DNA of 62,446 nt, filler included, from Sluysia triapertura (taxonomy: Eukaryota): NCBI GenBank assembly GCA_046118255.1. It is 4 parts of 4 records of this genome, joined end to end, with 100 filler letters (N's around TTAATTAATTAA, not from the genome) between each part and the next. Parts side by side here need not be neighbours in the genome. Positions count along the whole stretch, not along the records: positions 1 to 17,753 come from JBJNIA010183945.1; 3 more parts are not named here. One strand, given 5' to 3'. Below the pieces are notes generated by a model, which was not told where the DNA came from, did not search any database, and saw nothing but the letters and a program-made list of their open reading frames with translations. The position numbers and the translations under genes were made by a program. Positions 640 to 17,064 of the stretch are shown in pieces. The first letter of the stretch is position 1. Each line of letters opens with the position of its first letter.

Positions 640-1390
640 GAATCCATCATCTGTTTTATTTCTCCAATTCATCACTTGAAAGCTTACTTTTGTTAGCATT
701 ATAATTGTTATTTGTATTATATTTCGAATTGTCTTTAAAAAAAGAAAGCAAAATATCGCGATCTTTCGTCAAATGCTATGTAACTAACCTTTTGGTTACA
801 TAGAACGAAATATCGTTTTCTTCACCTATTTTTTCAACTTTAACATGATCATCTCTTACTAAAAAGTCTCTATTACCAACAATTTTGCCAATATTGAAAC
901 TTATCTTTTTTATCTTCAAGTGGCGCATGAAAATTCGAAATTCGTTATTTCTTTCATTTTTTTAAGATAACAAAATCTAAATTGCCTGATGAAAAATTAA
1001 ACCGTGAATTTGATTTGACAAAATTAGTATTGTTGGAAATTTTGTTTCCTTTGTATCAGTTATTGTTCTCAGTTGATTTCGAAGGTTTTCAGCGGAGCCC
1101 ATTGACCTTCTCGTTATCACTATCAATACCATAAACACAATTTTTGGATAGCCACAAAAATTTACAAGTTGATGAGCTTTCTACATTGTTACACAAGCAA
1201 GATGCCTTTAGAAATTGTGGTTTCGCAACTTTTACGCAACAATCCTGAATTGATTTAAGCTTTTCTGATTTTGAAATTTTTGAATCTTGATTATGCGAAA
1301 AATTCAACATAAATATATTTGGAATTTGTTGTTGATGCTGCAACTATTTCATTTGCAATTTGTCTTGCATTTGAAATAATTTTAACATGT
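640..1390 (-). pseudogene. Degenerate coding remnant, unidentified
   Basis: ORF 1089..1343 extends both ways through in-frame stops and a frameshift (MLKLFQMQDKLQMK*LQHQQQ...GLR*KPSKSTENN*...ISFNIGKIVGNRDFLVRDDHVKVEK); no recognisable domain. Confidence 0.25.
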
Positions 1391-1552
1391 TATAAGGTCA
1401 TCAAAAAGAAAATAAGAAAGAAAAGTATTGATGTGACTTTGACTTAAAAAATATAATCATTTATATTGTTAATTAAAAAGAGAACGTAATAATGGAATAT
1501 GATGTGACGAAAATTAGAAAAGGAGAAAAAAATACAATGATAATACGTCTCA

Positions 1553-1850
1553 TGTAGAGAAATCATATCAAAATATCAATGCTTAATCATATAAAAACAT
1601 CTCTTACATACACGGAACATTAAACAAACTACTTAACTCATTCAAAAAACAAACCTAATCATTGTATGTAATTGTCATGAATTATAGTTATTGTTATTAT
1701 AAATCCAATCGTATTAATAATCCTTATAATAATTTTTCATAATAACTTTTATAATAACGTCACAACACCATTATTTTAAAATATATAATAATTACATTAT
1801 TGTTATCATTATTATTTCTTTTATTACTACCATCAACCTTTCTTCTTATT
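1553..1850 (+). repeat. LTR-like repeat family A, copy 1
   Basis: Starts TGTAGAGAAATCAT; shares aaacaaactaYtWaactcattcaaaaa, taattRtcatgaa, aataacttttataataa and ttgttatcattattat with 7936-8329; the 5' motifs also occur in the reverse complement of 17854-18031. Confidence 0.75.
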
Positions 1851-2299
1851 CTTTTGTTTGTGTGAATTTGTATATATTTATGTATGTGCGTATCTGAAAA
1901 AATATCTGTCTAAAAAACAAAACCTAATGATCGTGAAATCAAATGTTATTTCATCAGGAAAATGTTTTATATTAAAAAGTGATACTATTTCGAAATTATC
2001 AAGATTAATCATTCCAAACTATCGTATTTCGTTGTACAAATTATCATTGTGTATCTTAATTACAGCATGAACAGTTATGTCAGTTATTGAAGAGAACAAT
2101 CATGGATCGTTGTCACTTTTAGGTGCATTTTTATGGTTTAATTTCTAGTCTTTGTAGAATATACAACACGTGAATTAAGTACAACTTGAAACGTTATGTT
2201 AATATCTTATGTTATGAATTTTGGTACTTTTATCATTTTATTACCTATTGCCTTAATATCTATTCCATCAATTTTATCAATAATTGCTTATTAACCAAT

Positions 2300-2900
2300 T
2301 ATTTTCCAAAACAAATCTTCACAAAATTTCCAAATGTTTTTATTTCTAACAATTCAAATGAGTATTCAAAATTACCACTAAGTTCTGTTGCAAATCAAAA
2401 CAAGTACATTACTTCAAGTTCTAAAGTACAAAGACTAGATCAAACGATTCCACAATGTCAATCTCATCTTAATTTTTATTCTGCAATAGAGACAAATTTA
2501 TAGGCAAACATATGTTCAAAATCATCTTTAATTCGTAAACCAATACCTTACAAAAGTGATCCTTTATTTTCTACTGTTCCAGAATTATTCATTCCTCATT
2601 CTACATCTCCATTTCTTTTTTTTCGGATCATCTGGTATTCACATGAATTCACAATAATTTTTAGACAGTCTTATTAGCTGCTGCTTCATTTCAGATGCGA
2701 ACTAAACCACGTAGATCTATGTTACGTCGATCACTATTTTCCGATAGTCAAATACAAGGTTTTGAAGATGCCTTCAAGAAACATGCATACAAAGCTAAGC
2801 CAGATCGCAAGGAATTAGCAGATCGACTTGCATTAAAAGATGCACAGGTGAAAATATGGTTTCAAAACCATCGAATGAAATAGCGTAACTTTAAAGAGTT
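2300..2900 (+). pseudogene. dbx: Dbx-class homeobox pseudogene fragment
   Basis: KPRRSMLRRSLFSDSQIQGFEDAFKKHAYKAKPDRKELADRLALKDAQVKIWFQNHRMK*RN matches Dbx (KPRRGMLRRAVFSDVQR...SKPDRKKLA..LGLKDSQVKIWFQNRRMKWRN); Trp codon is TAG at 2881-2883; WFQNRR is WFQNHR; upstream coding-like sequence has stops. Confidence 0.85.
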
Positions 2901-3058
2901 GCCCATAAACTAGCGATTGCAGAAGTAGATCTAGAAAGAACTGAATCTCGCTTAGAAAATTGCGAAAGCAAGACCATAGAACTGGGAGAAGAATTGAAAA
3001 TTGTTGTAATAACATGAAGTCATCGGAGATATCCGAGTAAGAAGCAGCTCAACGAGAA
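2898..3058 (+). pseudogene. tpm: Tropomyosin internal fragment (about residues 165-218) fused to the Dbx fragment
   Basis: [52 protein letters not shown] matches spiralian tropomyosin ([52 protein letters not shown]); one frameshift, one stop; not in the ORF track. Confidence 0.88.
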
Positions 3059-3097
3059 AGAAATGAAAATACCGAAGACAAAAAATTACGATTTTAA

Positions 3098-3536
3098 ATG
3101 GAAGATGAATCAAATGAGCCTAAGTCATTATTTAATTGGTCGAAATATTCCGAATTTCAATCTTATTCAATAATTGACAATGATGATGATACTTATGATA
3201 AAACGTCTGATCATTCTTATACTGAGCAGTATGATGACCAAGAAGCTAAAAATAACGAATTAAATTTTGTTGTATTTCAGCCATCATTTATTGATCATCC
3301 GTTAGCAGAATGCACACGATTATCAAGTCAATATCAGACATTTGAACCGTTAAATTTGATAACCTCTGTTACTGATAATGCTGAAGACAATTTATACCGA
3401 ACAGGTTTAACAAATTTTTACATTACGTAGTAAACCTAGAATTAATTTTAAACTATCATTTTAGTCTATTTGGTGCTTTTGCACATTATTATGTTGCGGT
3501 ATATTTATACATAATTATTATTGTATCATTACTGTG
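3098..3536 (+). pseudogene. Further gene fragment(s): acidic segment, then a possible DHHC palmitoyltransferase-like TM segment
   Basis: ORF 3098..3430; candidate GT..AG intron 3405-3464 gives ...SVTDNAEDNLYRT/VYLVLLHIIMLRYIYT, loosely like the ZDHHC2/15/20 TM1-TM2 region. Confidence 0.25.
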
Positions 3537-5217
3537 GTAATAAAAAAAGATCCAAAAATTAAAACTATAAAAAAATTCATTAAAATGTTAATAACTAAAA
3601 ATTTGGAATCTGTACTAACAAACAAATTAGTTGAATTAGATTTAGAAACTACTTATATGCACTTCATTTATATTTTTAATGCTGTTTTTTGATAAAATAT
3701 CAACAACTAAAATTAGTGTAAAATTCGATACGAGTACTGTGTCAACATTATGTCAAGTAGAAGTTCTTATTTTTGATTGAGACAAAATCCATGGTTAGAT
3801 CGTTGGTTACAAATTAATGGATGTTCACCTTCCAAATATGGAGTTTATTATCATAGTTTTATGATGCCAATACATCGAAATATTTATAATAAACGATTCT
3901 CAGGCAAAGATGATGAAACATTTTTGAAAAAAATAGAATATTAGAATAAAATCGTTTTTGTAAAATTTGTTAAACAGAACCAATTTGTATTATGAGTTTT
4001 GAGACAAAATGTTTTTGAATTCGATCATAACTTTAGCAAAGTTTTTGGAGCCATATGCTGGATACTGTTTAACGAATTTTAAAGATAATTACGTTAGTTT
4101 ATTTGTGTTAGGGTAGGTTATACATTAAAAATATCCAACTAAAATATTCTCAAAATCATTTTTCTAAATTAATTTTTTAAAGATCTTATAATAGATCTCC
4201 GTAAAATCTGTACTAAAATATTACTTATTTTTAGGAATTAATTTAATTCCTCACAAATTACCATATTTTATTATACTGTAAATTCGTTTATATTTTGTAT
4301 GTAATAAATTTTTTAAGAAAACCTTCATTATTTTTTAAAATTTTATAGCTTTAAATATAAAATCTCTAGAAGAATAACGCTTTCAACGATTAGAATTTAA
4401 ATCTAATCCCGTAAAATCAATTTTATAGATAATTTTCATAGGATCATCGTAAAATACTTAATAAACTATTTATTTAATTACTTTAATCATTTCGAACACT
4501 TAATACTAGAGATAATTTGTATATCTCCGGAACTTACTAAAATCGAGAATCAATAATTGTTAAACTATGAATAGCAGAATCACTCATATCTTAGAAAGTT
4601 TATACACTCCTTAGACAACATTAATTCTATTAAAATACCTCCAGATTTAGATTAGATTTGAAAGAATAACATTGATTTTTATTGAAATATCTCCAAAATT
4701 AAATCGGAATTAACAGTCAAGTTATTAAGTAAAGAATACCCTAACAGAACTACACTTCAGACAATGTTTCCTAACCTTTACTTTAAAATATTTTATCTAC
4801 AAATCCAACGGCTAGCCCTAACTGGTAAGCCTAGTACGTTGGTGGACTCACGTTAAAATTATTCTTTATTCTAAAATTCTCACAAACGTATTATACAAAA
4901 GATTTCTATGAAAAATAAATTTATTATTCCATTAACTTTATCCTCAATTTAAGTTAATAAATTGCGTTATTGATAGAATAGCTATATAATAATAATATTA
5001 AATTTTAATTTAATTATACTAAAAAGATAACAAATCCCACTATCTTTGTTAATTACAAAAGATAATTAATTGGACATAGGCTGAAATTACTATTTGAATT
5101 TAATCAGTAAAATTAGTCGGCTTATCACAGACTAAAAAGATTAATAATTTAATTTCCGTCTTGTCCAATTTCCATTCTTCCAAATGATTATGAAATTACT
5201 GCATAGGTAGTAATAAT

Positions 5218-6725: not shown

Positions 6726-7511
6726 TTATTTCAATCTACTTTTTTTTCTTGTTGGTTGTTTAGAAGCATATTTTTCTTCTAAATTATTGAAAAAACATTC
6801 CATTGATTTTTCCCGGTTTTGTTGTCGTTGAAGTATAAGTTGTGTTAGGTCTGCGTCTTTTTCTAATTTCATATTCTTTTCATAATCCCTTTTCTGTCTT
6901 TGAGCATTTCTCATCCTAGCATTACGTTTTTGTTTCGTTTCATTTGTATACGATTTATAAGGTTCAACTTCATTAGATTCAATCCACTTATCAATAATTG
7001 ATCTATAACGTGGTTCATCTTCAACACTTGAAAGCATAAGACTTTCTATTATTTGATCCATATTTCCTTTATATTTAATATATAAATCTTTGAGATCGTT
7101 TTCCTCTTCCTTACTGCCTTTATAAGAGTTTTCAAACTCTTCAATTTTTTTTATAGTTACTTTAGGATACAACAGTCTAAAATACGTTTCCCAACTTTCA
7201 AACGTGTCATTATCAAATGTATCATCAACATGACCAGTATCGTCATATATTTTTCTTTTTTCTGGATCACTTAATATATTGTGAATTTTAGAAATCAACT
7301 GAAATCTAAACTTAGCATTTTCTTTATCTGAATTTTTGTCAGGATGATGTTTTAAAGATAATTTTTTGTAAGCTTTTTTTACTTAAAAACATAATTAATG
7401 ATGTATTAAGTTACTTTCATCATCAGAACAGTTTTTTGATAATCCAAAAACGTTATATAAATTTTCATCACCAAAGTGAAAATTTAAATCTTTTAATAGA
7501 GACGATTTCAT
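6726..7511 (-). CDS. DNAJC9: DnaJ homolog subfamily C member 9 (exons 7511-7415 and 7381-6726)
   Basis: ATG at 7511; a 33-nt GT-AG intron (7382-7414) restores MKSSLL...NLYNVFGL...IKKAYKKLSLKHHPDK...ILSDPEKRKIYDDTG; DNAJC9 hallmarks YKGSKEEENDLKDLY and FFNNLEEKYA; ends in TAA. Confidence 0.93.
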
Positions 7512-8364: not shown

Positions 8365-8921
8365 CCCGTTGTTGGTAGAAGATTGCATCCACAATATCCA
8401 TTCATTGAAGCAGAGGTAAAATGGGCATGCTTAGAATATGCAGTAAAAGCAGTTGATGTATTTGCATATCGTTTACGTCTTTCATTTCTCAATGTTTATG
8501 CTGCAGAAGAAGCTTTACCTAAAGTGATTGAAATTATGGGACAGCATTTCAATTGGTCACAGGAAAGAAAACAGCGAGAATATGATGAAGCTATGGATTA
8601 TCTGAGAAAACAAATGGGTCTAGGTTTGAAATGTCATATTCAAAGTATTCCAATAAATTTTTCTGAATGTGAAAAGAAAGAATTAATGGCTAAATTTAAA
8701 GCTATAGACAGTGACAATAAGGGATTTTTAACCGTTAAAGATCTGAAGAAATATTTAAAGGAACAAGATGAATCAAGTGAAGAAGTAATCACTGATGCTC
8801 AACTATTGAAAATTCTTGAGGAAGTTGATACAAATAAAAACGGTGAAATTGATGAAAATGAATTTCTTCGGTTTATGAGTGCTCTTAAAACGGGTGCAGT
8901 TGCTGAAAGTGGATTTAAACA
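8365..8921 (+). pseudogene. GPD2: C-terminal fragment of mitochondrial glycerol-3-phosphate dehydrogenase (EF-hand region), 5'-truncated
   Basis: PVVGRRLHPQYPFIEAEVKWACLEYAVKAVDVFAYRLRLSFLNVYAAEEALPKVIEIMG...EVDTNKNGEIDENEFLRFMSALKTG matches GPD2; FAD domain and final residues absent; no splice acceptor upstream, abuts repeat A. Confidence 0.9.
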
Positions 8922-9521
8922 TATGCTATTCAAGTGAACAATTTAGATGGGAGTGAAGCTTTGGTGTCGTTAATACAAAAAACTACTCGCAGTATTAAAA
9001 GAGATTTTAATTCTACTGGTTTAATACATATAGGATTTTCCATTTTTAGAATTGAATTTAATCGAATTACTCGTGTTCGAAAAGTAAATTATCAGAATTT
9101 TCAAGCATCATCGGTATTTATTAATAGTAGATCAGTTTTCTTAAAATTATTTCTTAAAAAAGGTTATTATTTGATTGTACCTTACGCTTACAATCTTGGA
9201 ATACCGAAATCATTTATTCTCCGATTATATTGTCAACAGAAACTGAAATCATTCGAACTATCTTTGTCTCGCCAACATTTGCCACAAAGATTGTCTGGAA
9301 TGTCTTTAAAAAGTACAAAGCTGATCACTAGAGTTACAATTCTTAGAGCTGTCAATTTACCATTCATAGATCCCATTGATGGAGCTAATACTTACGTGTT
9401 ATTACTATGTGAAGGTCAACAAGTAACAACATCAATTTGCAAAAAGTCACTTAACCCTATTTGGGAAGAATCTTTTTTCTTTTATCGCAAATGTCCAAAG
9501 AAAAAATTTATTCGAATTTTT
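8922..9521 (+). pseudogene. CAPN5: Calpain-5/Tra-3-type fragment (domain III plus start of C2 domain)
   Basis: YAIQVNNLDGSEALVSLIQK...HIGFSIFRIEFNR...FINSRSVFLKLFLKKGYYLIVPYAY...FILRLY, then C2 (RVTILRAVNLP...ANTYVLLLCEGQQV...SLNPIWEESFFFYRK); starts mid-motif (NPQY) and ends at donor GTTAGT 9522. Confidence 0.85.
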
Positions 9522-10129
9522 GTTAGTACATTACATTTTTATACAAGCGATTTTCCAAATTTATATATACGATTAGTTTTATTTCTTATAATCATGACAA
9601 ATATAAGAAATGGATTTAAACGTTTGATTTAAATATTTAATTAATAAGTTTTAAAAGGTTATAGAAAATGAGGCTATATATAAATCTTCTTTGGGTTAGG
9701 AAATGCTTAAAAATTTTTACCCCACAGTGCGTTTTGGTTTACATACATGCACCAAACAAATTTTTCTTTGATATTTTATTACATAAACAACTAACAAAAA
9801 CAAGACATGTACTTTATAATTACTTTGAAGGTAATTACTTTAAAGGTAATTACTTTAATTGTATTATCTGACATTTGTCATTAAGATTTTTGCGCTGGTG
9901 TTATTGACGTTTGTTCCAATTTGAAATTAAAATAAGTAGTAGTTACTGATTAAGCTAAGCTCTTTTTTCTCTCATTACATAGTGCATGTATTCATTATGT
10001 ATGACAAAATATAGAAAACGAACATATTTAAGATTAGTGGATTCAAGTATGTATTGAATACTTCATATGTGATTTGATTTTTCGTCATTTTTTATTCTTG
10101 AATATCCCAGCATTTGGGTTTAAAATGTT

Positions 10130-11815: not shown

Positions 11816-13551
11816 ATCTACATTGTAAAGATGAAAATGATAATGAAAATAAAAATAAAATTAATATATCTCCATCTGGTTCACTTGTGGCAAATGCATT
11901 ATTTGCAGTATATGCTGTTACACAATAACAATTACATCTACTCGAAGTTCTCTTTTAATAATATGGAATTATTCAAAACTTGGATTTTTAGTCCGGGTGT
12001 ATTTTATATTATAATAAATCCGATAAAAATCATCCTAATAATATTATATCTATAATATGCAAAAATAAGAATGAAATGCATTTAGTTAAAGATCAAGAAA
12101 AGCATATGCACATGATTGAATCCGGATACATTTTATGATGTAGAAATTAAGTATATTAATGACTCCATTAAAAAAAGTTTTACAAGTTTTAGAAGTGCTC
12201 GTAATGGCTCGATATTTGAAGGTAAAAAAATGAAGCTCCGTTAATTAGTACTTACATAAATTAAGGATAACAAAATTAAGAGTATTATTTTAGCTAACAG
12301 GACTTGTTGGTTTTTGAGAATAGGTTAATAGTCTCACCATTCAGTCATTATAAGGAAATGTAGCCATTCAAAGTATTTTAACAAGCAATGTCTTGGAGAA
12401 AATTACCAGAAGGTTAAAATTAAATATGCACCAAATAAAGTCTGTTCAGATTGGACAAGAAAAGTCATATTTGTGCTTATTTATTTACAACAACGAATGC
12501 TTTATCTGCGAAACTCACGTTGATATATGATAATCAATTTCGAGTTATGACACTAGGAAGTACGACTGAAGGTGGCCCTGAAAACTTGCAGGTTACTATA
12601 CTATGCAATCGATATATTGATTATTATATCGGAATCTTGTATTGTAGTTGTTTATATTACAGATTTTCTTCGTAAATACAAAGTATTTTGTTTCATACAC
12701 AAACAATAGATAAAAATATATAAGTAGGATATAAAAATCGTAACAAACGACACGTGATAATACAAATATAAAAAAAACTGGACAAACAAGTTCATGAGCG
12801 AAAGCTCCATTATTCAAAACTCGAAACATGTTTATTGAAATATATCCCGCATACAAAAAAACCAAATTCTTAGATTATCGATTAACCAATAGTTAAGTAG
12901 CAAGGAATATTTCAGAGTTAAATCAACTAATAAGCTTATTATTACTGCCGTTATCATCACTGTCGCAATAATATTTAGCAGTTAGTAACTCATGCATGCT
13001 TATAACAATTTATCTATTCTTATTTATTAAGGAGCATTATTTTTATTACTTTATAATTTAATATTTTTCTCATTTTGGTTTTTTATTTATTTAACTTTTA
13101 TTGATAATTGATTCTTATTACTAATTTGATCATTATTTGATCATTTCTGTGATTATATAAAAATCATTAAAATTTAATTGCCACAATCGAAGCACTAGAC
13201 ATAAATATTATTGATAAAGTTAATGAATTTAAAAAAACTGCCGAATCTAAAATTTTCGAGTATGACTATATAATTAAAATTACATACTTATTAAACTTTA
13301 ATAATAGAAAGAGAACACTGATTTTGATTAGTAATCATAAAGATTGGTTATCTTTATGAAATATCACAGAAACCTTTATCATGCGCTATGGAAATTCAAC
13401 TTTATTCAATAAAAATGAAATTATTGTTTAAACAGCAAGAAGTTATTATTGGTCTGCATCAAACGCTGAATCTTAAATTTTGCTATAAATCATTATCCCT
13501 TACATTTTCCAATAAACAATCTATTATGTGTAGAATTTTACAAGAGCATGT

Positions 13552-13709
13552 TATTGGGGTAAAAAGGCCTAAGGTGTCATTTAGTAAAATTGACAATAAT
13601 AAAATAAAACTGTTAGATGGGGTTGATAGCTCAGTGGTAGAGCATTCGAACTGCGCAGAAAAGGTCCCGGGTTCGATCCCCGGTCATTCAATTTTACGAA
13701 GTCTAACAA
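13552..13709 (+). repeat. tRNA-Ala-derived repeat (SINE-like), copy 1; tRNA-like core 13620-13691
   Basis: A box TAGCTCAGTGGTAGAGC and B box GGTTCGATCC; about 65-nt upstream leader shared with 51250-51410; TTTACGAAGTCTAACA tail shared with 33986-34032 and 51250-51410; anticodon arm does not fold normally. Confidence 0.85.
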
Positions 13710-13721
13710 TTTAATTATTTT

Positions 13722-15092
13722 TTATATTAAGACTACAATACATGAAGATTGTAAATATGGCCGGGGTTTATTATTGAAATTGAGATAAAAGTTATAATTA
13801 ATACTTATTATTTTCAAATAATTAAAATTTATTACTTCTGTATTATTAGAAATCATATAGAGAAAATAATCAATAACGTTATTATATTTATACAAAAAAT
13901 TAAAATTGAGATTTGAGTTACACAACAATTTATAAAAATTTAGTTTAGGCTTCCAAAGCCCATACATTTCACTATAAGAAACAATCTTGAAAAACAGATG
14001 AATTGAATTGCAAGTATTTATGTAATCAGCTGTGAAATGAGGAGTTAATGACTGACGTTCTAAACTGGCCATAGGTTTCTGACTTTCTAGTAAAGCTTCA
14101 AGAACGCGATCATGATCTGGGAGATAATTCTGAACTTGTATCAAAAACTCGTACAATACTAAATCAAATTTTAAACTTACAAAAACTTTTAAAATTTCAA
14201 CACTGCGTATCATAATATTGTGAAACAATTCTAATTGAATAACACTAATATAACTAGTTTTAAAATATTGTTTATTATTTTCGCGAAAATAAAAATGAAT
14301 ATAAAAATAAACTTTATAAAATTTAACAAAATGGGGGTACAAATGTACCGATACATTATTAAAATCGAAATAATAAGTCAAGACATATTTAGTTAATATA
14401 AAACCTTTTCTTAGATCGCCTAGAACATCTTTATCTGATACATAATTCAAAGCATTACTGTGATCTAAGGTAAGTCCACATTTATCTGACACATGATTTG
14501 AAACATGACAATGATCTAAAGTAAGACCACATTTATCTAATACATAATTTAAAACATAATAGTGATCTAAAGTAAGACCACATTTAACTAATACTTCATT
14601 TAAAACATAATAGTGATCTAAAGTAAGACCACATTTAACTAATACATCTTTCCTCTCCACATTAGAGCATTCACATTTCAAAATACTAATAGTTGGACAT
14701 TTTAAAAGATCAGCATTTAACATTCTATACAGGTTATGAACTGAGTTGGTCAAATCTCCTTCGTCGTTTGCATCTATGATCATTTCTTCCTTCATCTCTA
14801 TGGCGTCTGATTCCTTTTCAAATTGCTTCATGAACATTTGTAACAGTGGCAAGTTCGTAGGTCTAGTCATACGTTGCATGGTTTTCATAACTTCTTTCAT
14901 ATCCTGGGTCATCATATTTGTCGATCGCAATATTTCCATCTGCATGGATTTCGTGATATCATTACTTGGACATTTTGTTTCTTGCGTCTTGATTTTCTGT
15001 TGCATTAATGCAGACAACTCGAACAACTGTTCAGCATTTTCACTTTCCATTGCTGCTTTCATTCCAAATACTTGATGCTTTAAACTAAACAT
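13722..15092 (-). CDS. Intronless 456-aa CHMP2/Vps2 (ESCRT-III, Snf7 family)-derived protein with 17-aa tandem repeats and a novel C-terminal half
   Basis: SMQMEILRSTNMMTQDMKEVMKTMQRMTRPTNLPLLQMFMKQFEKESDAIEMKEEMIIDAND aligns with CHMP2A SLKIQTLKSNNSMAQAMKGVTKAMGTMNRQLKLPQIQKIMMEFERQAEIMDMKEEMMNDAID; repeat VLDKCGLTLD resembles CHMP2 VLDELGLSL. Confidence 0.75.
   Translation of the reverse strand: MFSLKHQVFGMKAAMESENAEQLFELSALMQQKIKTQETKCPSNDITKSMQMEILRSTNMMTQDMKEVMKTMQRMTRPTNLPLLQMFMKQFEKESDAIEMKEEMIIDANDEGDLTNSVHNLYRMLNADLLKCPTISILKCECSNVERKDVLVKCGLTLDHYYVLNEVLVKCGLTLDHYYVLNYVLDKCGLTLDHCHVSNHVSDKCGLTLDHSNALNYVSDKDVLGDLRKGFILTKYVLTYYFDFNNVSVHLYPHFVKFYKVYFYIHFYFRENNKQYFKTSYISVIQLELFHNIMIRSVEILKVFVSLKFDLVLYEFLIQVQNYLPDHDRVLEALLESQKPMASLERQSLTPHFTADYINTCNSIHLFFKIVSYSEMYGLWKPKLNFYKLLCNSNLNFNFLYKYNNVIDYFLYMISNNTEVINFNYLKIISINYNFYLNFNNKPRPYLQSSCIVVLI
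14429..14649 (-). repeat. Coding 51-bp tandem repeat, about 4.3 copies
   Basis: agtgatctaaagtaagaccacattta recurs at 14561 and 14612 (51-nt period); translates as xVLxKCGLTLDHxxVLN. Confidence 0.92.
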
Positions 15093-15299
15093 TTTTTGAA
15101 CTGTAATATTTTTGAAATGTATATTTTAAAAAATTCGAAAAATTTCTTTGTAACCGAATTGACCTTTGGACTATATTGCTAAAAAATAAATTCGTAAAAT
15201 TAAAACAAAAATACATAAAATAAACAATAATAAAAATAATAATAATCATAATAATAAAAATTAATAATCATAATAATAAAAATTAATAATAAATAATCA

Positions 15300-16474
15300 T
15301 TGTATAAAAATATTTCAACTGGTAATTTAGTTAAATTGTCATAACATTGGTTGATCCATGATGGTTTTATAAATGAAACATTGTCATATTTAGAATTAAT
15401 TGGTAAATTATTAACGATAACATGTGTTGGTTTATTTGTATCAATTTTTCCACCTAAATTAAGAATTTTCTCAGTTAATTTAGTTATTAAATCAATTGAA
15501 CAATTTTCAAATGAAAATAAGCAATCTTCAAATATATTAGTTTCATCAACAAATTCTGATTCGCCATTTAATTCTAATACCGCATCAATTTCATTTAAAA
15601 TTTCTGTATTATTAAGAACTTTGTGTGTAGTCTTTTTATTAAGGTTGTATAGATTAATATCTTGACAGTAATTATATTTGAAACTTTCTTCTAAGTCTAA
15701 ACTTACAGTTGGTATATTCCATAAATTAGCATGATGTCACTTACTTCCAGTTCGATCATGAGATACTAAAATCGTTGTTGAATCTTTTAACAAATCCGCT
15801 GAAAATTCACCGCCATTTTCTATTATTTTCTTTCTATAACGTTCTTTTATCGTTGAACTAAAACCACTTAAACAAATCTTCAATTTATAAAATAAAGGCA
15901 CTTTATGTTTAGTTGTTAATTCCGATGACAGAGCATCGAAATGAATTACAGTTGAAGATATATCCAAAATTTCATCTATCCAACTTCGTTTTAAACAAAC
16001 GACGCCTTTTTGATTAGCAATTATGAATTTATCTGTCAATATGTTTTCTACGATTAAAGCATTTACTTCTTCGGTTAACCCAGTACAAACAATGCCACCC
16101 ATCATTTCAATTATTTCAAAAATACTTCCCTTTAGTTCTTTTGTAAACCCAACAGTACAAATGCGGATATCTTCTAATACACTATTAAGTCTGGGATTTT
16201 TAATGATTGGCAAATGGAGCTTTTTCATTAAACAATTTAATACAACCGCTGGATGTAAAATATGCATTCCTAGCTTCTTTAAATGCAAAAAAGCAGGACC
16301 ATGAAATTTTGACATAACAAAAAAAATATCTTTCTTAAATTCTTGGTATGACACAGCTTCAATTTCATTTATTATTTTAATAGAAACACCATCTAAAGAC
16401 TTAATTTCTTGCACAACCTTTTTCAATAAAAGTGATTTATCATCTTTAAAAAACAACATATTCCATTTACCCAT
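15300..16474 (-). pseudogene. TOPBP1: TOPBP1-like N-terminal multi-BRCT copy: intronless, internal TGA, 3'-truncated
   Basis: FHGPAFLHLKKLGMHILHPAVVLNCL, IEMMGGIV...SWI and PLFYKLKICLSGF...IENGGEFS match TOPBP1 BRCT0-2; frame continues past TGA 15737-15739 (GSK*HHANLWNIPTV...YCQDINLY vs GQKYECAKRWNVHCV...FCQDESIY) into another BRCT (NLGGKI...PTHVIV...PSWINQCY), then runs into TTA-rich sequence. Confidence 0.82.
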
Positions 16475-17064
16475 TGAAAGAAAATAAAATTAATGTCTCT
16501 TCAAAATATACATATAAAATAAAACAGAACTCATTTGATTTATGTAAATGATAAAATAATTTTTAAATACCTTATTAAACAAACAAATTCGCTTAATTCT
16601 TTTTTTAAATAGTGTAAAATATTAAACATAATTTATTTTGAAAATAAAACCAAATTTTAAACCAAAATTTTAGCTTAAATAAAATATCATATTTTTGTAA
16701 GTAACTATTGAAATATTAAAACAAATGTTTTAAAAAAAAGAGTAGTAATATTCAATTACAAATGAGATACATTTTTAATTTGACTTTCAGAATGATTTTG
16801 GTAGATTAAATGTATTATATTGTTTGTTATCGGGTACTAAAAGGAAATGAAAAATTTCTAAAGAAATTTTTAAAGATACGACTTAAACGATCAAGCATAT
16901 ATCTTAAGAAAAGCTTACCATAATAAATATGATTAATTATTATTACTTATTGTTATTTACCATAATAAATATGCTATTTATCTGTCTAGGTATGACAATT
17001 GCGTGAAAATTATTTGTTTTTAGGATGCCTGTCTTTTATTAGACATTTTCTTTTCTTGTTATAC

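What the first reader, a model, noticed from the sequence alone, without database searches (positions are those of the whole stretch)
13722..15092. Intact, remodelled ESCRT-III (CHMP2) derivative with an amplified C-terminal helix and a novel tail of about 230 aa
Seen: an uninterrupted 456-codon ORF in very AT-rich DNA. The CHMP2-like core is kept, the N-terminus is unrecognisable as CHMP2, the VLDELGLSL-like segment is amplified about 4-fold as a Cys/His-containing 17-mer, and no terminal MIM is evident; an F/Y/L/N-rich tail follows instead. Known: this C-terminal region regulates ESCRT-III autoinhibition and VPS4 handling, and truncated CHMP3 retrocopies in mammals act as virus-budding inhibitors. 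Inference: a lineage-specific neofunctionalised or element-borne ESCRT-III, possibly dominant-negative or membrane-tethered.
Basis: partly seen in the sequence, partly recalled or inferred. Interest (0 to 1): 0.8.

Follow-up and report, generated by a model that had tools for sequence, protein, structure and literature searches.

The report
CHMP2 fragment inside a high-copy repeat
The 456-codon reading frame is real, but it is one copy of a family of several hundred about 1.5-kb mobile-looking repeats that carry open reading frames patched together from host-gene pieces (here 63 residues of CHMP2A), not a remodelled ESCRT-III gene.

Summary
The ORF (13722-15092, minus strand) exists and is far from chance. 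Only residues 49-111 are recognisably ESCRT-III: 57% identity to residues 87-149 of the genome's own CHMP2A, and a Pfam Snf7 score of 21 bits, below the 27.3-bit cut-off. The N-terminus, the 51-bp x4.3 repeat and the 230-aa tail are modules of a dispersed repeat family. The tail has at least 644 candidate copies. The 3' end motif CCGGCCATNNNTACA occurs 364 times against 6 for the control.

Units are about 1.5 kb. They begin in a (TTA)n/22-mer tract and end sharply at that motif, with unrelated flanks, no poly(A), no terminal inverted repeats and no stop codon of their own. Other members carry HSP70, TPR or EF-hand fragments in place of CHMP2, all sense and in frame. All CHMP2 pieces form one clade derived from the host CHMP2A, which points to a single capture.

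About 71% of long copies keep the frame open, although neutral drift of 2.5% would already add 1.2 stops. The amino-acid sequence is barely constrained (dN/dS about 0.6; codon-position changes 142:120:156). The tail has no homologue in 1.84 billion proteins and no confident fold.

Best reading: a composite, probably retroposon-like element with a captured CHMP2A fragment. Expression could not be tested.

The parts
13722..15092 (-). 456-codon ORF plus stop codon. The last 8 codons and the stop lie in flanking DNA beyond the end of the repeat unit.
13750..15327 (-). One complete unit, about 1.58 kb, of the dispersed mosaic repeat family. The 5' limit is approximate (15292-15327).
   Evidence: Homology to other copies starts at query positions 94-129 and stops at the 3' motif. 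Read depth is 850-4400 here against about 8-170 in the neighbouring single-copy gene.
13750..13764 (-). Conserved 3' terminal motif CCGGCCATNNNTACA. Homology between copies ends within 0-1 base after it.
   Evidence: 364 exact genome matches against 6 for the reversed control
13749..14414 (-). Tail module (about aa 227-448), the part shared by all family members.
   Evidence: At least 644 first-look candidates and 153 scored matches at 35-93% aa identity; alignment A2; no homologue elsewhere; AlphaFold2 mean pLDDT 40
14430..14647 (-). 51-bp (17-aa) tandem repeat, 4.3 copies. The copy number differs between family members (7 in L035, 3 in L037, 2 in L033).
14760..14948 (-). CHMP2A-derived segment (aa 49-111), a decayed part of a 342-nt fragment captured from the host CHMP2A gene.
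   Evidence: BLASTP 57% identity to own CHMP2A residues 87-149; 82% nt identity over 171 nt, and sister copies 86-93% over L011:1516-1857; tree; Pfam Snf7 21.2 bits
14958..15092 (-). N-terminal family module (aa 1-45, including the ATG). It is shared with copies that lack the CHMP2 piece.
   Evidence: L075, L076, L081
15093..15189 (-). Leader upstream of the ATG. It contains a TATAG...AAGGTCA motif (about 15159-15177) that recurs in other copies, often beside the palindrome ACTATATAGT.
   Evidence: A promoter role is inferred, not tested.
15190..15327 (-). 5' terminal tract of (TTA)n-like sequence and 22-nt tandem repeats. All full-length copies begin with it, and upstream flanks are unrelated.
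   Evidence: TRF period 22 x3.3 at 15226-15297

Best explanation
The ORF is one copy of a high-copy, dispersed, mosaic repeat family. It is most likely a composite non-autonomous retroposon, comparable in build to SVA elements.

Build of a unit:
- It is about 1.5 kb long.
- It starts with a simple-repeat/22-mer tract followed by a leader with conserved motifs.
- It carries a long open reading frame that runs right to a conserved 3' terminus (CCGGCCAT...ACA). The unit has no stop codon of its own.
- The 5' half of the frame is a patchwork of modules. These include sense, in-frame fragments of host genes and a variable-number tandem repeat.
- The 3' half is a family-specific tail of about 215 aa.

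In this lineage of copies, a 342-nt piece of the host's intronless CHMP2A gene (residues 63-176) was captured once and then amplified and decayed. The window copy keeps 63 recognisable residues.

Shown:
- family membership and unit boundaries;
- a single origin of the CHMP2A fragment;
- maintenance of the frame across the family despite almost free amino-acid change;
- at least one 5'-truncated copy with an intact 3' end.

Inferred:
- Copies spread through an RNA intermediate, using the reverse transcriptase of one of the genome's many retroelements.
- Source copies must stay translatable, either for transcript stability or ribosome association, or because a loosely constrained protein is needed.
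- The CHMP2 piece has no ESCRT function here.
For: Family and copy number:
- The tail matches at least 644 candidate sites, 153 of them scored.
- The 3' motif occurs 364 times against 6 for the control.
- Contig depth over the ORF is 850-4400, against about 8-170 over the adjacent BRCT gene.

Boundaries:
- More than 25 copies end at the same motif and have unrelated 3' flanks.
- Copies begin in the (TTA)n/22-mer tract and have unrelated 5' flanks.
- No inverted copy of the terminus is present and no terminal inverted repeats were found.
- L052 is cut at unit position about 1291, has 1.5 kb of unrelated upstream DNA and keeps an intact 3' end. Other internal partial matches also end at the 3' end.

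Mosaic structure:
- Members carry pieces of CHMP2A, HSP70 (Pfam E 2.7e-10; PDB matches), TPR and EF-hand.
- Tandem-repeat copy numbers vary between members.

Capture of CHMP2A:
- The copies checked share the same 5' boundary on the CHMP2A gene (L011:1857), and two of three also the same 3' boundary (L011:1516), at 86-93% nt identity.
- The fragments form one clade (support 95/90) sister to the host CHMP2A.
- The segment shows no significant similarity to the CHMP2B-like gene.

Frame maintenance:
- 50 of 70 matches of at least 150 aa have no stop (counted).
- In a neutral simulation, 2.5% divergence gives 1.2 stops in 215 codons (P of none 0.29), and 10% divergence gives P 0.0075.
- dN/dS has a median of 0.63, and differences by codon position are 142:120:156.
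- The proportion of open frames is similar to that of reverse-transcriptase domains in the same genome: 112 of 150 without a stop, from at least 3354 candidates.
Against: - No poly(A) tail or microsatellite follows the 3' end, and no target-site duplication was seen in the copies examined.
- No partner LINE sharing the 3' end was found. None of the contigs listed coincide, but both lists are partial.
- The repeat tract at the 5' end would be an equally natural 3' tail for an element read on the other strand.
- A conserved leader with TATA-like and AAGGTCA motifs inside the unit also fits DNA-level duplication of a complete gene.
- An open frame of 400-550 codons is not a feature of known composite retroposons.
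- Only one truncated copy was inspected base by base.
- No RNA data exist for this organism in the run index, so transcription and translation are untested.
Confidence: 0.55

Rival explanations
1. It belongs to a lineage-specific, greatly expanded host protein family. The genes would diversify by duplication, ectopic recombination and exon shuffling. The window ORF would be an expressed gene whose product has a function, possibly interference with ESCRT-III through its CHMP2-derived helices.
For: - Frames stay open across copies that share only 35-40% identity.
- dN/dS is below 1.
- Indels in the family alignment preserve the frame.
- A leader motif and, in this subfamily, the ATG are conserved.
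- Units appear to carry their own upstream region.
Against: - Changes are spread almost evenly over the three codon positions.
- The family alignment gives a mean pLDDT of 40.
- There are no homologues in 1.84 billion proteins.
- The unit lacks its own stop codon and ends inside the frame.
- Truncated copies exist.
- Copies have landed inside other repeats; for example, L044 continues in frame into an IS1595-like transposase fragment.
- The CHMP2 piece is optional within the family.
- The window copy differs from L035 with dN/dS 0.84.
Confidence: 0.2
2. It is a DNA-level mobile element of the gene-fragment-capturing kind (like a Helitron or Pack-type element), moved as DNA rather than through RNA.
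For: - Several unrelated host-gene fragments are present.
- There are no target-site duplications and no terminal inverted repeats.
- The 3' end is sharp and conserved, with a small G+C-rich island about 10 nt from the end.
- The upstream regulatory-looking region is carried along.
Against: - The termini do not fit Helitron ends (no 5' TC, no 3' CTRR, no real hairpin).
- The flanking bases show no A/T insertion-site rule.
- All captured fragments are sense and in frame.
- No transposase or Rep/helicase was seen next to any copy.
Confidence: 0.12
3. One reading: a single neofunctionalised CHMP2 paralogue whose amplified C-terminal helix and new tail give it a dominant-negative or membrane-tethered ESCRT-III function.
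For: - The ORF is intact.
- It contains a segment truly derived from CHMP2A.
- It has no MIM.
Against: - Only residues 87-149 of CHMP2A survive, and Snf7 scores below threshold.
- Every other part is a module of a repeat family with hundreds of copies.
- No transmembrane segment is present.
- Divergence from the closest copy is near neutral.
Confidence: 0.03

Closest known systems
SVA-type composite non-autonomous retroposons of hominoids (SVA, LAVA), including subfamilies that picked up a host exon (own knowledge, not tested here)
   Same: Both have a simple repeat at the 5' end, an internal variable-number tandem repeat, a conserved 3' module and acquired host-gene pieces at the 5' side. Both reach hundreds of dispersed copies, include 5'-truncated copies with intact 3' ends, and encode no enzyme of their own.
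   Different: Here there is no poly(A) tail and no target-site duplication was seen. The unit carries a 400-550-codon frame that is kept open across the family and runs to the very 3' end. The modules are unrelated in sequence to SVA.
Gene-fragment-capturing DNA elements (Pack-MULEs, Helitrons)
   Same: Both carry several fragments of unrelated host genes joined in one element, giving chimeric reading frames.
   Different: Here there are no terminal inverted repeats, no 9-bp duplications and no Helitron ends. The fragments are all sense and in frame, and the frame appears to be maintained by selection.
CHMP2A / Vps2 (ESCRT-III, Pfam Snf7 PF03357)
   Same: Residues 49-111 descend from the host CHMP2A (57% identity). 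The tree places all repeat-borne fragments next to it.
   Different: The ORF lacks helix 1, the first half of helix 2, the acidic autoinhibitory end and the MIM. It scores below the Pfam threshold. It is multi-copy and embedded in a repeat.
Truncated CHMP3 retrocopies of mammals that block virus budding
   Same: Both are a partial ESCRT-III sequence duplicated away from the parent gene.
   Different: Those retrocopies keep the N-terminal polymerising core and lose only the C-terminal end. Here the N-terminal core is the part that is missing, and the piece is a passenger in a repeat family.

Membership tests
ESCRT-III / Snf7 (CHMP2) | Snf7 domain scoring above Pfam's gathering threshold over most of the profile | tested here: not met
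   21.2 bits against the 27.3 cut-off, covering profile positions 71-141 of 171. The window copy is not listed among the 28 matches at E <= 0.01 in the genome-wide Snf7 scan.
ESCRT-III / Snf7 (CHMP2) | N-terminal basic helical hairpin (helices 1-2) that forms the polymer and binds membrane | tested here: not met
   BLASTP aligns only CHMP2A residues 87-149. Residues 1-45 are a family module found in copies that have no CHMP2 part.
ESCRT-III / Snf7 (CHMP2) | C-terminal autoinhibitory region ending in a MIM that binds VPS4 | tested here: not met
   No motif of the form (D/E)xxLxxRLxxL(K/R), nor a looser form, is present. BLASTP gives no significant alignment to the MIM-bearing C-terminal end of CHMP2A; one weak match (E 0.08) reaches residues 167-214.
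ESCRT-III / Snf7 (CHMP2) | Descent from a CHMP2 gene | tested here: met
   82% nt identity over 171 nt to the host CHMP2A, with sister copies at 86-93% over 342 nt. The fragments form a clade with the host CHMP2A.
Composite LINE-dependent retroposon (SVA-like) | Dispersed copies with a fixed 3' end and variable 5' truncation | tested here: met
   The 3' end is sharp in more than 25 copies. L052 is a truncated copy. Internal partial matches end at the 3' end. Only one truncated copy was inspected base by base.
Composite LINE-dependent retroposon (SVA-like) | Poly(A) or simple-repeat 3' tail and flanking target-site duplications | tested here: not met
   No A-run or repeat follows the terminus, and no direct repeats were found at the flanks of the copies examined.
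Composite LINE-dependent retroposon (SVA-like) | 5' simple repeat plus internal variable-number tandem repeat | tested here: met
   A (TTA)n/22-mer tract lies at the 5' end. The 51-bp repeat occurs in 2 to 7 copies, and some members have a 24-bp repeat instead.
Composite LINE-dependent retroposon (SVA-like) | A partner LINE whose enzyme recognises the shared 3' end | tested here: inconclusive
   Reverse-transcriptase genes are abundant and many are intact.
Helitron | 5' TC and 3' CTRR ends, a subterminal 3' hairpin, and insertion between A and T | tested here: not met
   Units end in ...TACA(A) with no hairpin, and the flanking bases vary.
TIR DNA transposon / Pack-MULE | Terminal inverted repeats and fixed-length target-site duplications | tested here: not met
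   No inverted copy of the terminus occurs in any locus. No convincing inverted repeats lie within the unit.

The most novel reading that the evidence does not exclude
The family may be a so far undescribed kind of mobile cassette whose spread depends on being translated. It would be an open-ended frame with no stop codon of its own, reaching the element's 3' terminus, which picks up host-gene fragments in frame (ESCRT-III, HSP70, TPR, EF-hand). Alternatively, the same cassettes may be a host-used, fast-diversifying protein family built from such fragments, some of which could act as decoys for ESCRT or chaperone partners.
Probability: 0.15. Interest if true: 0.75.

Novelty: new variant of a known kind. 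Interest (0 to 1): 0.42.

Why it matters
For annotation, this ORF should not be called a CHMP2 paralogue. The genome has a normal ESCRT-III set, including intact intronless CHMP2A- and CHMP2B-like genes. It also has a dozen or more CHMP2A fragments that are passengers in a repeat.

For genome biology, the family is a clear case of host-gene fragments being captured and copied hundreds of times while the joint reading frame stays open, even though the protein sequence is hardly constrained. This raises a testable question: is it translation itself, rather than the protein, that is selected in a mobile element? Such cassettes could also be a steady source of chimeric proteins in this AT-rich invertebrate.

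Tried and rejected
- Whole-ORF search of 5.8 billion proteins: no hit. The length window excludes normal CHMP2 proteins.
- Tail profile against PDB sequences, 1.84 billion representative proteins and the ESM Atlas: nothing.
- AlphaFold2 with the 25-member family alignment: mean pLDDT 40. No fold search was attempted on so poor a model.
- Idea that the tail is the decayed C-terminus plus 3' UTR of CHMP2A: a weak BLASTP hint (E 0.08) was not borne out by a profile search of the CHMP2A locus in three frames.
- Idea that the whole family is a decayed full-length HSP70: rejected. Only HSP70 positions of about 125-190 match, and the piece I first took for the HSP70 N-terminus is TPR-like.
- ARAGORN found no tRNA in the window, but Rfam does find the tRNA-like head of a SINE.
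- Terminal inverted repeats and inverted copies of the 3' motif: none.
- Target-site duplications, looked for by eye at the flanks of the full-length copies with a recognisable 3' motif and of L052: none.
- Expression: no RNA run holds the stretch. The four runs laid are DNA contigs, so expression remains untested.
- Organism: names are coded. The guess Protopolystoma xenopodis was rejected: its proteome is public, yet the best CHMP2A hit is only 77% identical, and monogenean genomes are reported at 31-38% GC.
This stopped the search for a partner element and a wider census of truncated copies.

Full report
**1. The observation**

The minus strand of 13722-15092 holds an ATG-to-stop ORF of 456 codons, in DNA of 24-30% GC.
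- In the last 230 codons the reading frame has no internal stop, while the other five frames have 17-32.
- None of 20,000 shuffles of that stretch stayed open. The frame is not a chance product.
- Tandem Repeats Finder reports a 51-bp unit repeated 4.3 times at 14430-14647.
- No MIM-like motif and no transmembrane-like segment is present. The best 19-residue hydropathy window scores 1.69 and contains four charged residues.

**2. How much ESCRT-III is there**

Pfam gives a single sub-threshold Snf7 match: 21.2 bits against a cut-off of 27.3, covering residues 49-113 and profile positions 71-141 of 171.

The genome (619 Mb in 263,945 contigs) has a normal ESCRT-III set, including an intact intronless CHMP2A-like gene of 228 aa and a CHMP2B-like gene.
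- Against that CHMP2A the ORF aligns only over residues 49-111, to CHMP2A residues 87-149, at 57% identity.
- Against the CHMP2B-like protein it does not align significantly.
- Helix 1, the first half of helix 2, the acidic C-terminal part and the MIM are therefore absent. The statement that the core is kept does not hold.

**3. The ORF is one copy of a large repeat family**

The ORF region matches dozens of contigs of the same genome at 76-96% identity. Several counts show the scale:
- The 230-aa tail used as a protein query finds at least 644 first-look candidates and 153 scored matches, at 35-93% identity.
- The last 15 bases of the shared region, CCGGCCATNNNTACA, occur 364 times in the genome against 6 for the reversed control.
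- Contigs of the best DNA run pile up to depth 850-4400 over the ORF, against about 8-170 over the neighbouring single-copy BRCT gene.

The unit has defined ends:
- In more than 25 copies homology stops within a base of the 3' motif, and the sequence beyond is unrelated, with no A-run.
- At the other end all full-length copies begin in a (TTA)n-like tract with 22-nt tandem repeats, again with unrelated flanks.
- In the window the unit spans about 13750-15327.

Other features of the unit:
- The frame has no stop codon of its own. It runs 0-94 codons into whatever lies beyond the unit, 8 codons in the window.
- There are no terminal inverted repeats and no inverted copy of the terminus.
- I saw no target-site duplications.
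- Between the repeat tract and the frame lies a leader with recurring TATA-like, ACTATATAGT and AAGGTCA motifs. That these act as a promoter is inference.

**4. The family is a mosaic**

Members share the C-terminal stretch of about 170-215 residues and differ upstream.
- Some carry the CHMP2A piece, with or without an internal deletion.
- Others carry an HSP70 piece (Pfam E 2.7e-10; matches to solved HSP70 nucleotide-binding domains), a TPR-like piece, an EF-hand piece, acidic repeats or unassigned sequence.
- All of these are in the sense direction and in one continuous frame.
- The window's first 45 residues, including the ATG, are a module shared with copies L075, L076 and L081, which continue into a different middle part.
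- The 51-bp repeat is present 7, 3 or 2 times in other copies. Some copies have a 24-bp repeat in its place.
- In sister copies the 17-residue unit lies downstream of an intact VLDELGIEMN segment. Its similarity to that CHMP2A segment is faint: 22 of 29 bases, reached by 6 of 500 shuffles.

**5. Origin of the CHMP2 piece**

- The copies checked match the host CHMP2A gene from the same 5' boundary (L011:1857), two of three down to the same 3' boundary (L011:1516); this corresponds to residues 63-176, at 86-93% nucleotide identity. The window copy matches at 82% over 171 nt.
- In a maximum-likelihood tree the repeat-borne fragments form one clade (support 95/90) next to the host CHMP2A, inside metazoan CHMP2A.
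- The window copy sits on a long branch (0.45) with L080 and L022 (support 99/96).
- This fits one capture followed by amplification and decay.

**6. Selection**

- Of 70 tail matches that span at least 150 residues, 50 have no stop (counted).
- In a simulation that mutates the window's tail with the family's base composition, 2.5% divergence already gives 1.2 stops on average (probability of none 0.29). At 10% divergence the probability of none is 0.0075. The lineages that produce copies are therefore kept open by selection.
- The amino-acid sequence is barely constrained. Pairwise dN/dS is 0.4-1.2 with a median of 0.63.
- In ten disjoint pairs the differences fall 142:120:156 on codon positions 1, 2 and 3.
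- The window copy differs from its closest relative, L035, with dN/dS 0.84.
- The share of open copies resembles that of reverse-transcriptase domains in the same genome: 112 of the best 150 have no stop, out of at least 3354 candidates.

**7. The tail has no known relative**

- There is no Pfam family and no useful match among solved structures.
- There is no hit in 1.84 billion representative proteins and none in the ESM Atlas.
- AlphaFold2 with the 25-member alignment gives a mean pLDDT of 40.
- The species' own proteome is not in the public collection. The best CHMP2A hit is 77% identical, and the best named one is from the flatworm Macrostomum lignano at 74%. The blank therefore speaks only for other organisms.

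**8. How it probably works**

At least one copy, L052, is cut off at unit position about 1291. It has 1.5 kb of unrelated DNA upstream and a complete 3' end. Other internal partial matches also reach the 3' end.

The following features together resemble composite, enzyme-less retroposons such as SVA more than anything else:
- a fixed 3' end with variable 5' truncation;
- a 5' simple-repeat tract and an internal variable tandem repeat;
- host-gene pieces in the sense direction;
- the lack of any enzyme gene;
- a genome full of intact reverse transcriptases.

I therefore read the unit as a non-autonomous element copied through RNA. The open frame would be kept because source transcripts must be translatable, or because a loosely constrained product is needed.

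This step is inferred, and four things speak against it:
- There is no poly(A) tail, no target-site duplication was seen, and no partner LINE was found.
- The repeat tract would also make sense as the 3' tail of an element read on the other strand.
- The leader motifs would also fit DNA-level copying of a whole gene.
- An open frame of 400-550 codons is not a feature of known composite retroposons.

The main rivals are a fast-evolving host protein family or a DNA-level capturing element.

**9. Limits**

- No RNA run holds this stretch, so expression is untested.
This stopped the census of truncated copies and the search for a partner element.
- The organism's name is coded. It is an AT-rich, intron-poor invertebrate.

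**10. Verdict**

The finding is a captured CHMP2A fragment inside a member of an unusual, frame-preserving mosaic repeat family. The family, rather than the CHMP2 piece, is the point of interest.

Noticed in passing
window 13620-13691 (+), high-depth block about 13522-13743: A tRNA-like sequence (Rfam tRNA, 37.9 bits; not called by ARAGORN) lies in a block of about 190 bp with enormous contig depth, 270,000-750,000 against about 100 for single-copy DNA. It is a very abundant tRNA-derived SINE, inserted directly after the ORF's stop codon. A related copy lies near the canonical CHMP2A gene (L011:3059-3150).
   Followed up: partly
window 15300-16474 (-): A TopBP1/ECT2-like gene has BRCT0, BRCT and twin-BRCT domains in large exons of 245 and 178 aa. 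Its last reading frame runs straight into the repeat unit's 5' (TTA)n tract, so the insertion may have replaced the gene's original end.
   Followed up: partly
window 6726-7298 (-), 8383-8937 (+), 8934-9632 (+): By eye, long ORFs look like a DNAJC9-like protein, the EF-hand C-terminus of a mitochondrial glycerol-3-phosphate dehydrogenase, and a C2-domain-like piece. They suggest an intron-poor animal genome. None was checked with Pfam.
   Followed up: no
G000 contigs C211088, C186499, C5300, C25564, C214538 (loci L011-L014, L023): The canonical ESCRT-III genes of this genome are each one uninterrupted ORF or nearly so. CHMP2A-, CHMP2B- and CHMP5-like genes are uninterrupted; the C25564 and CHMP1-like (C214538) genes are only partly covered by one ORF.
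   Followed up: partly
G000, HSP70 scan: There are at least six intact intronless HSP70 genes. There are also dozens of partial HSP70 fragments of differing extent inside long open frames of 300-470 aa. Many of these are probably further members of the mosaic family with fresher HSP70 pieces.
   Followed up: no
L044 (G000:C20382), just after the unit's 3' end: One copy's frame continues in frame into the C-terminal half of an IS1595/ISXO2-like transposase fragment, so the unit inserted into another mobile element. L030 holds a hAT/ZBED-like transposase fragment.
   Followed up: no
runs X2-X4 laid on window 13300-16600: Runs labelled as three other organisms hold near-identical short pieces of the ORF and the SINE, at about 1/300 of the depth in X1. 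This looks like carry-over between libraries, or traces of the same or a close species. It is not independent evidence of conservation.
   Followed up: no
family alignment A2, last residues; window 13750-13764: The Arg-Pro codons at the 3' terminus are CGG CCA in nearly all copies, forming a G+C-rich island in a genome of 25% GC. This suggests that the terminus is conserved as DNA or RNA rather than as protein.
   Followed up: partly
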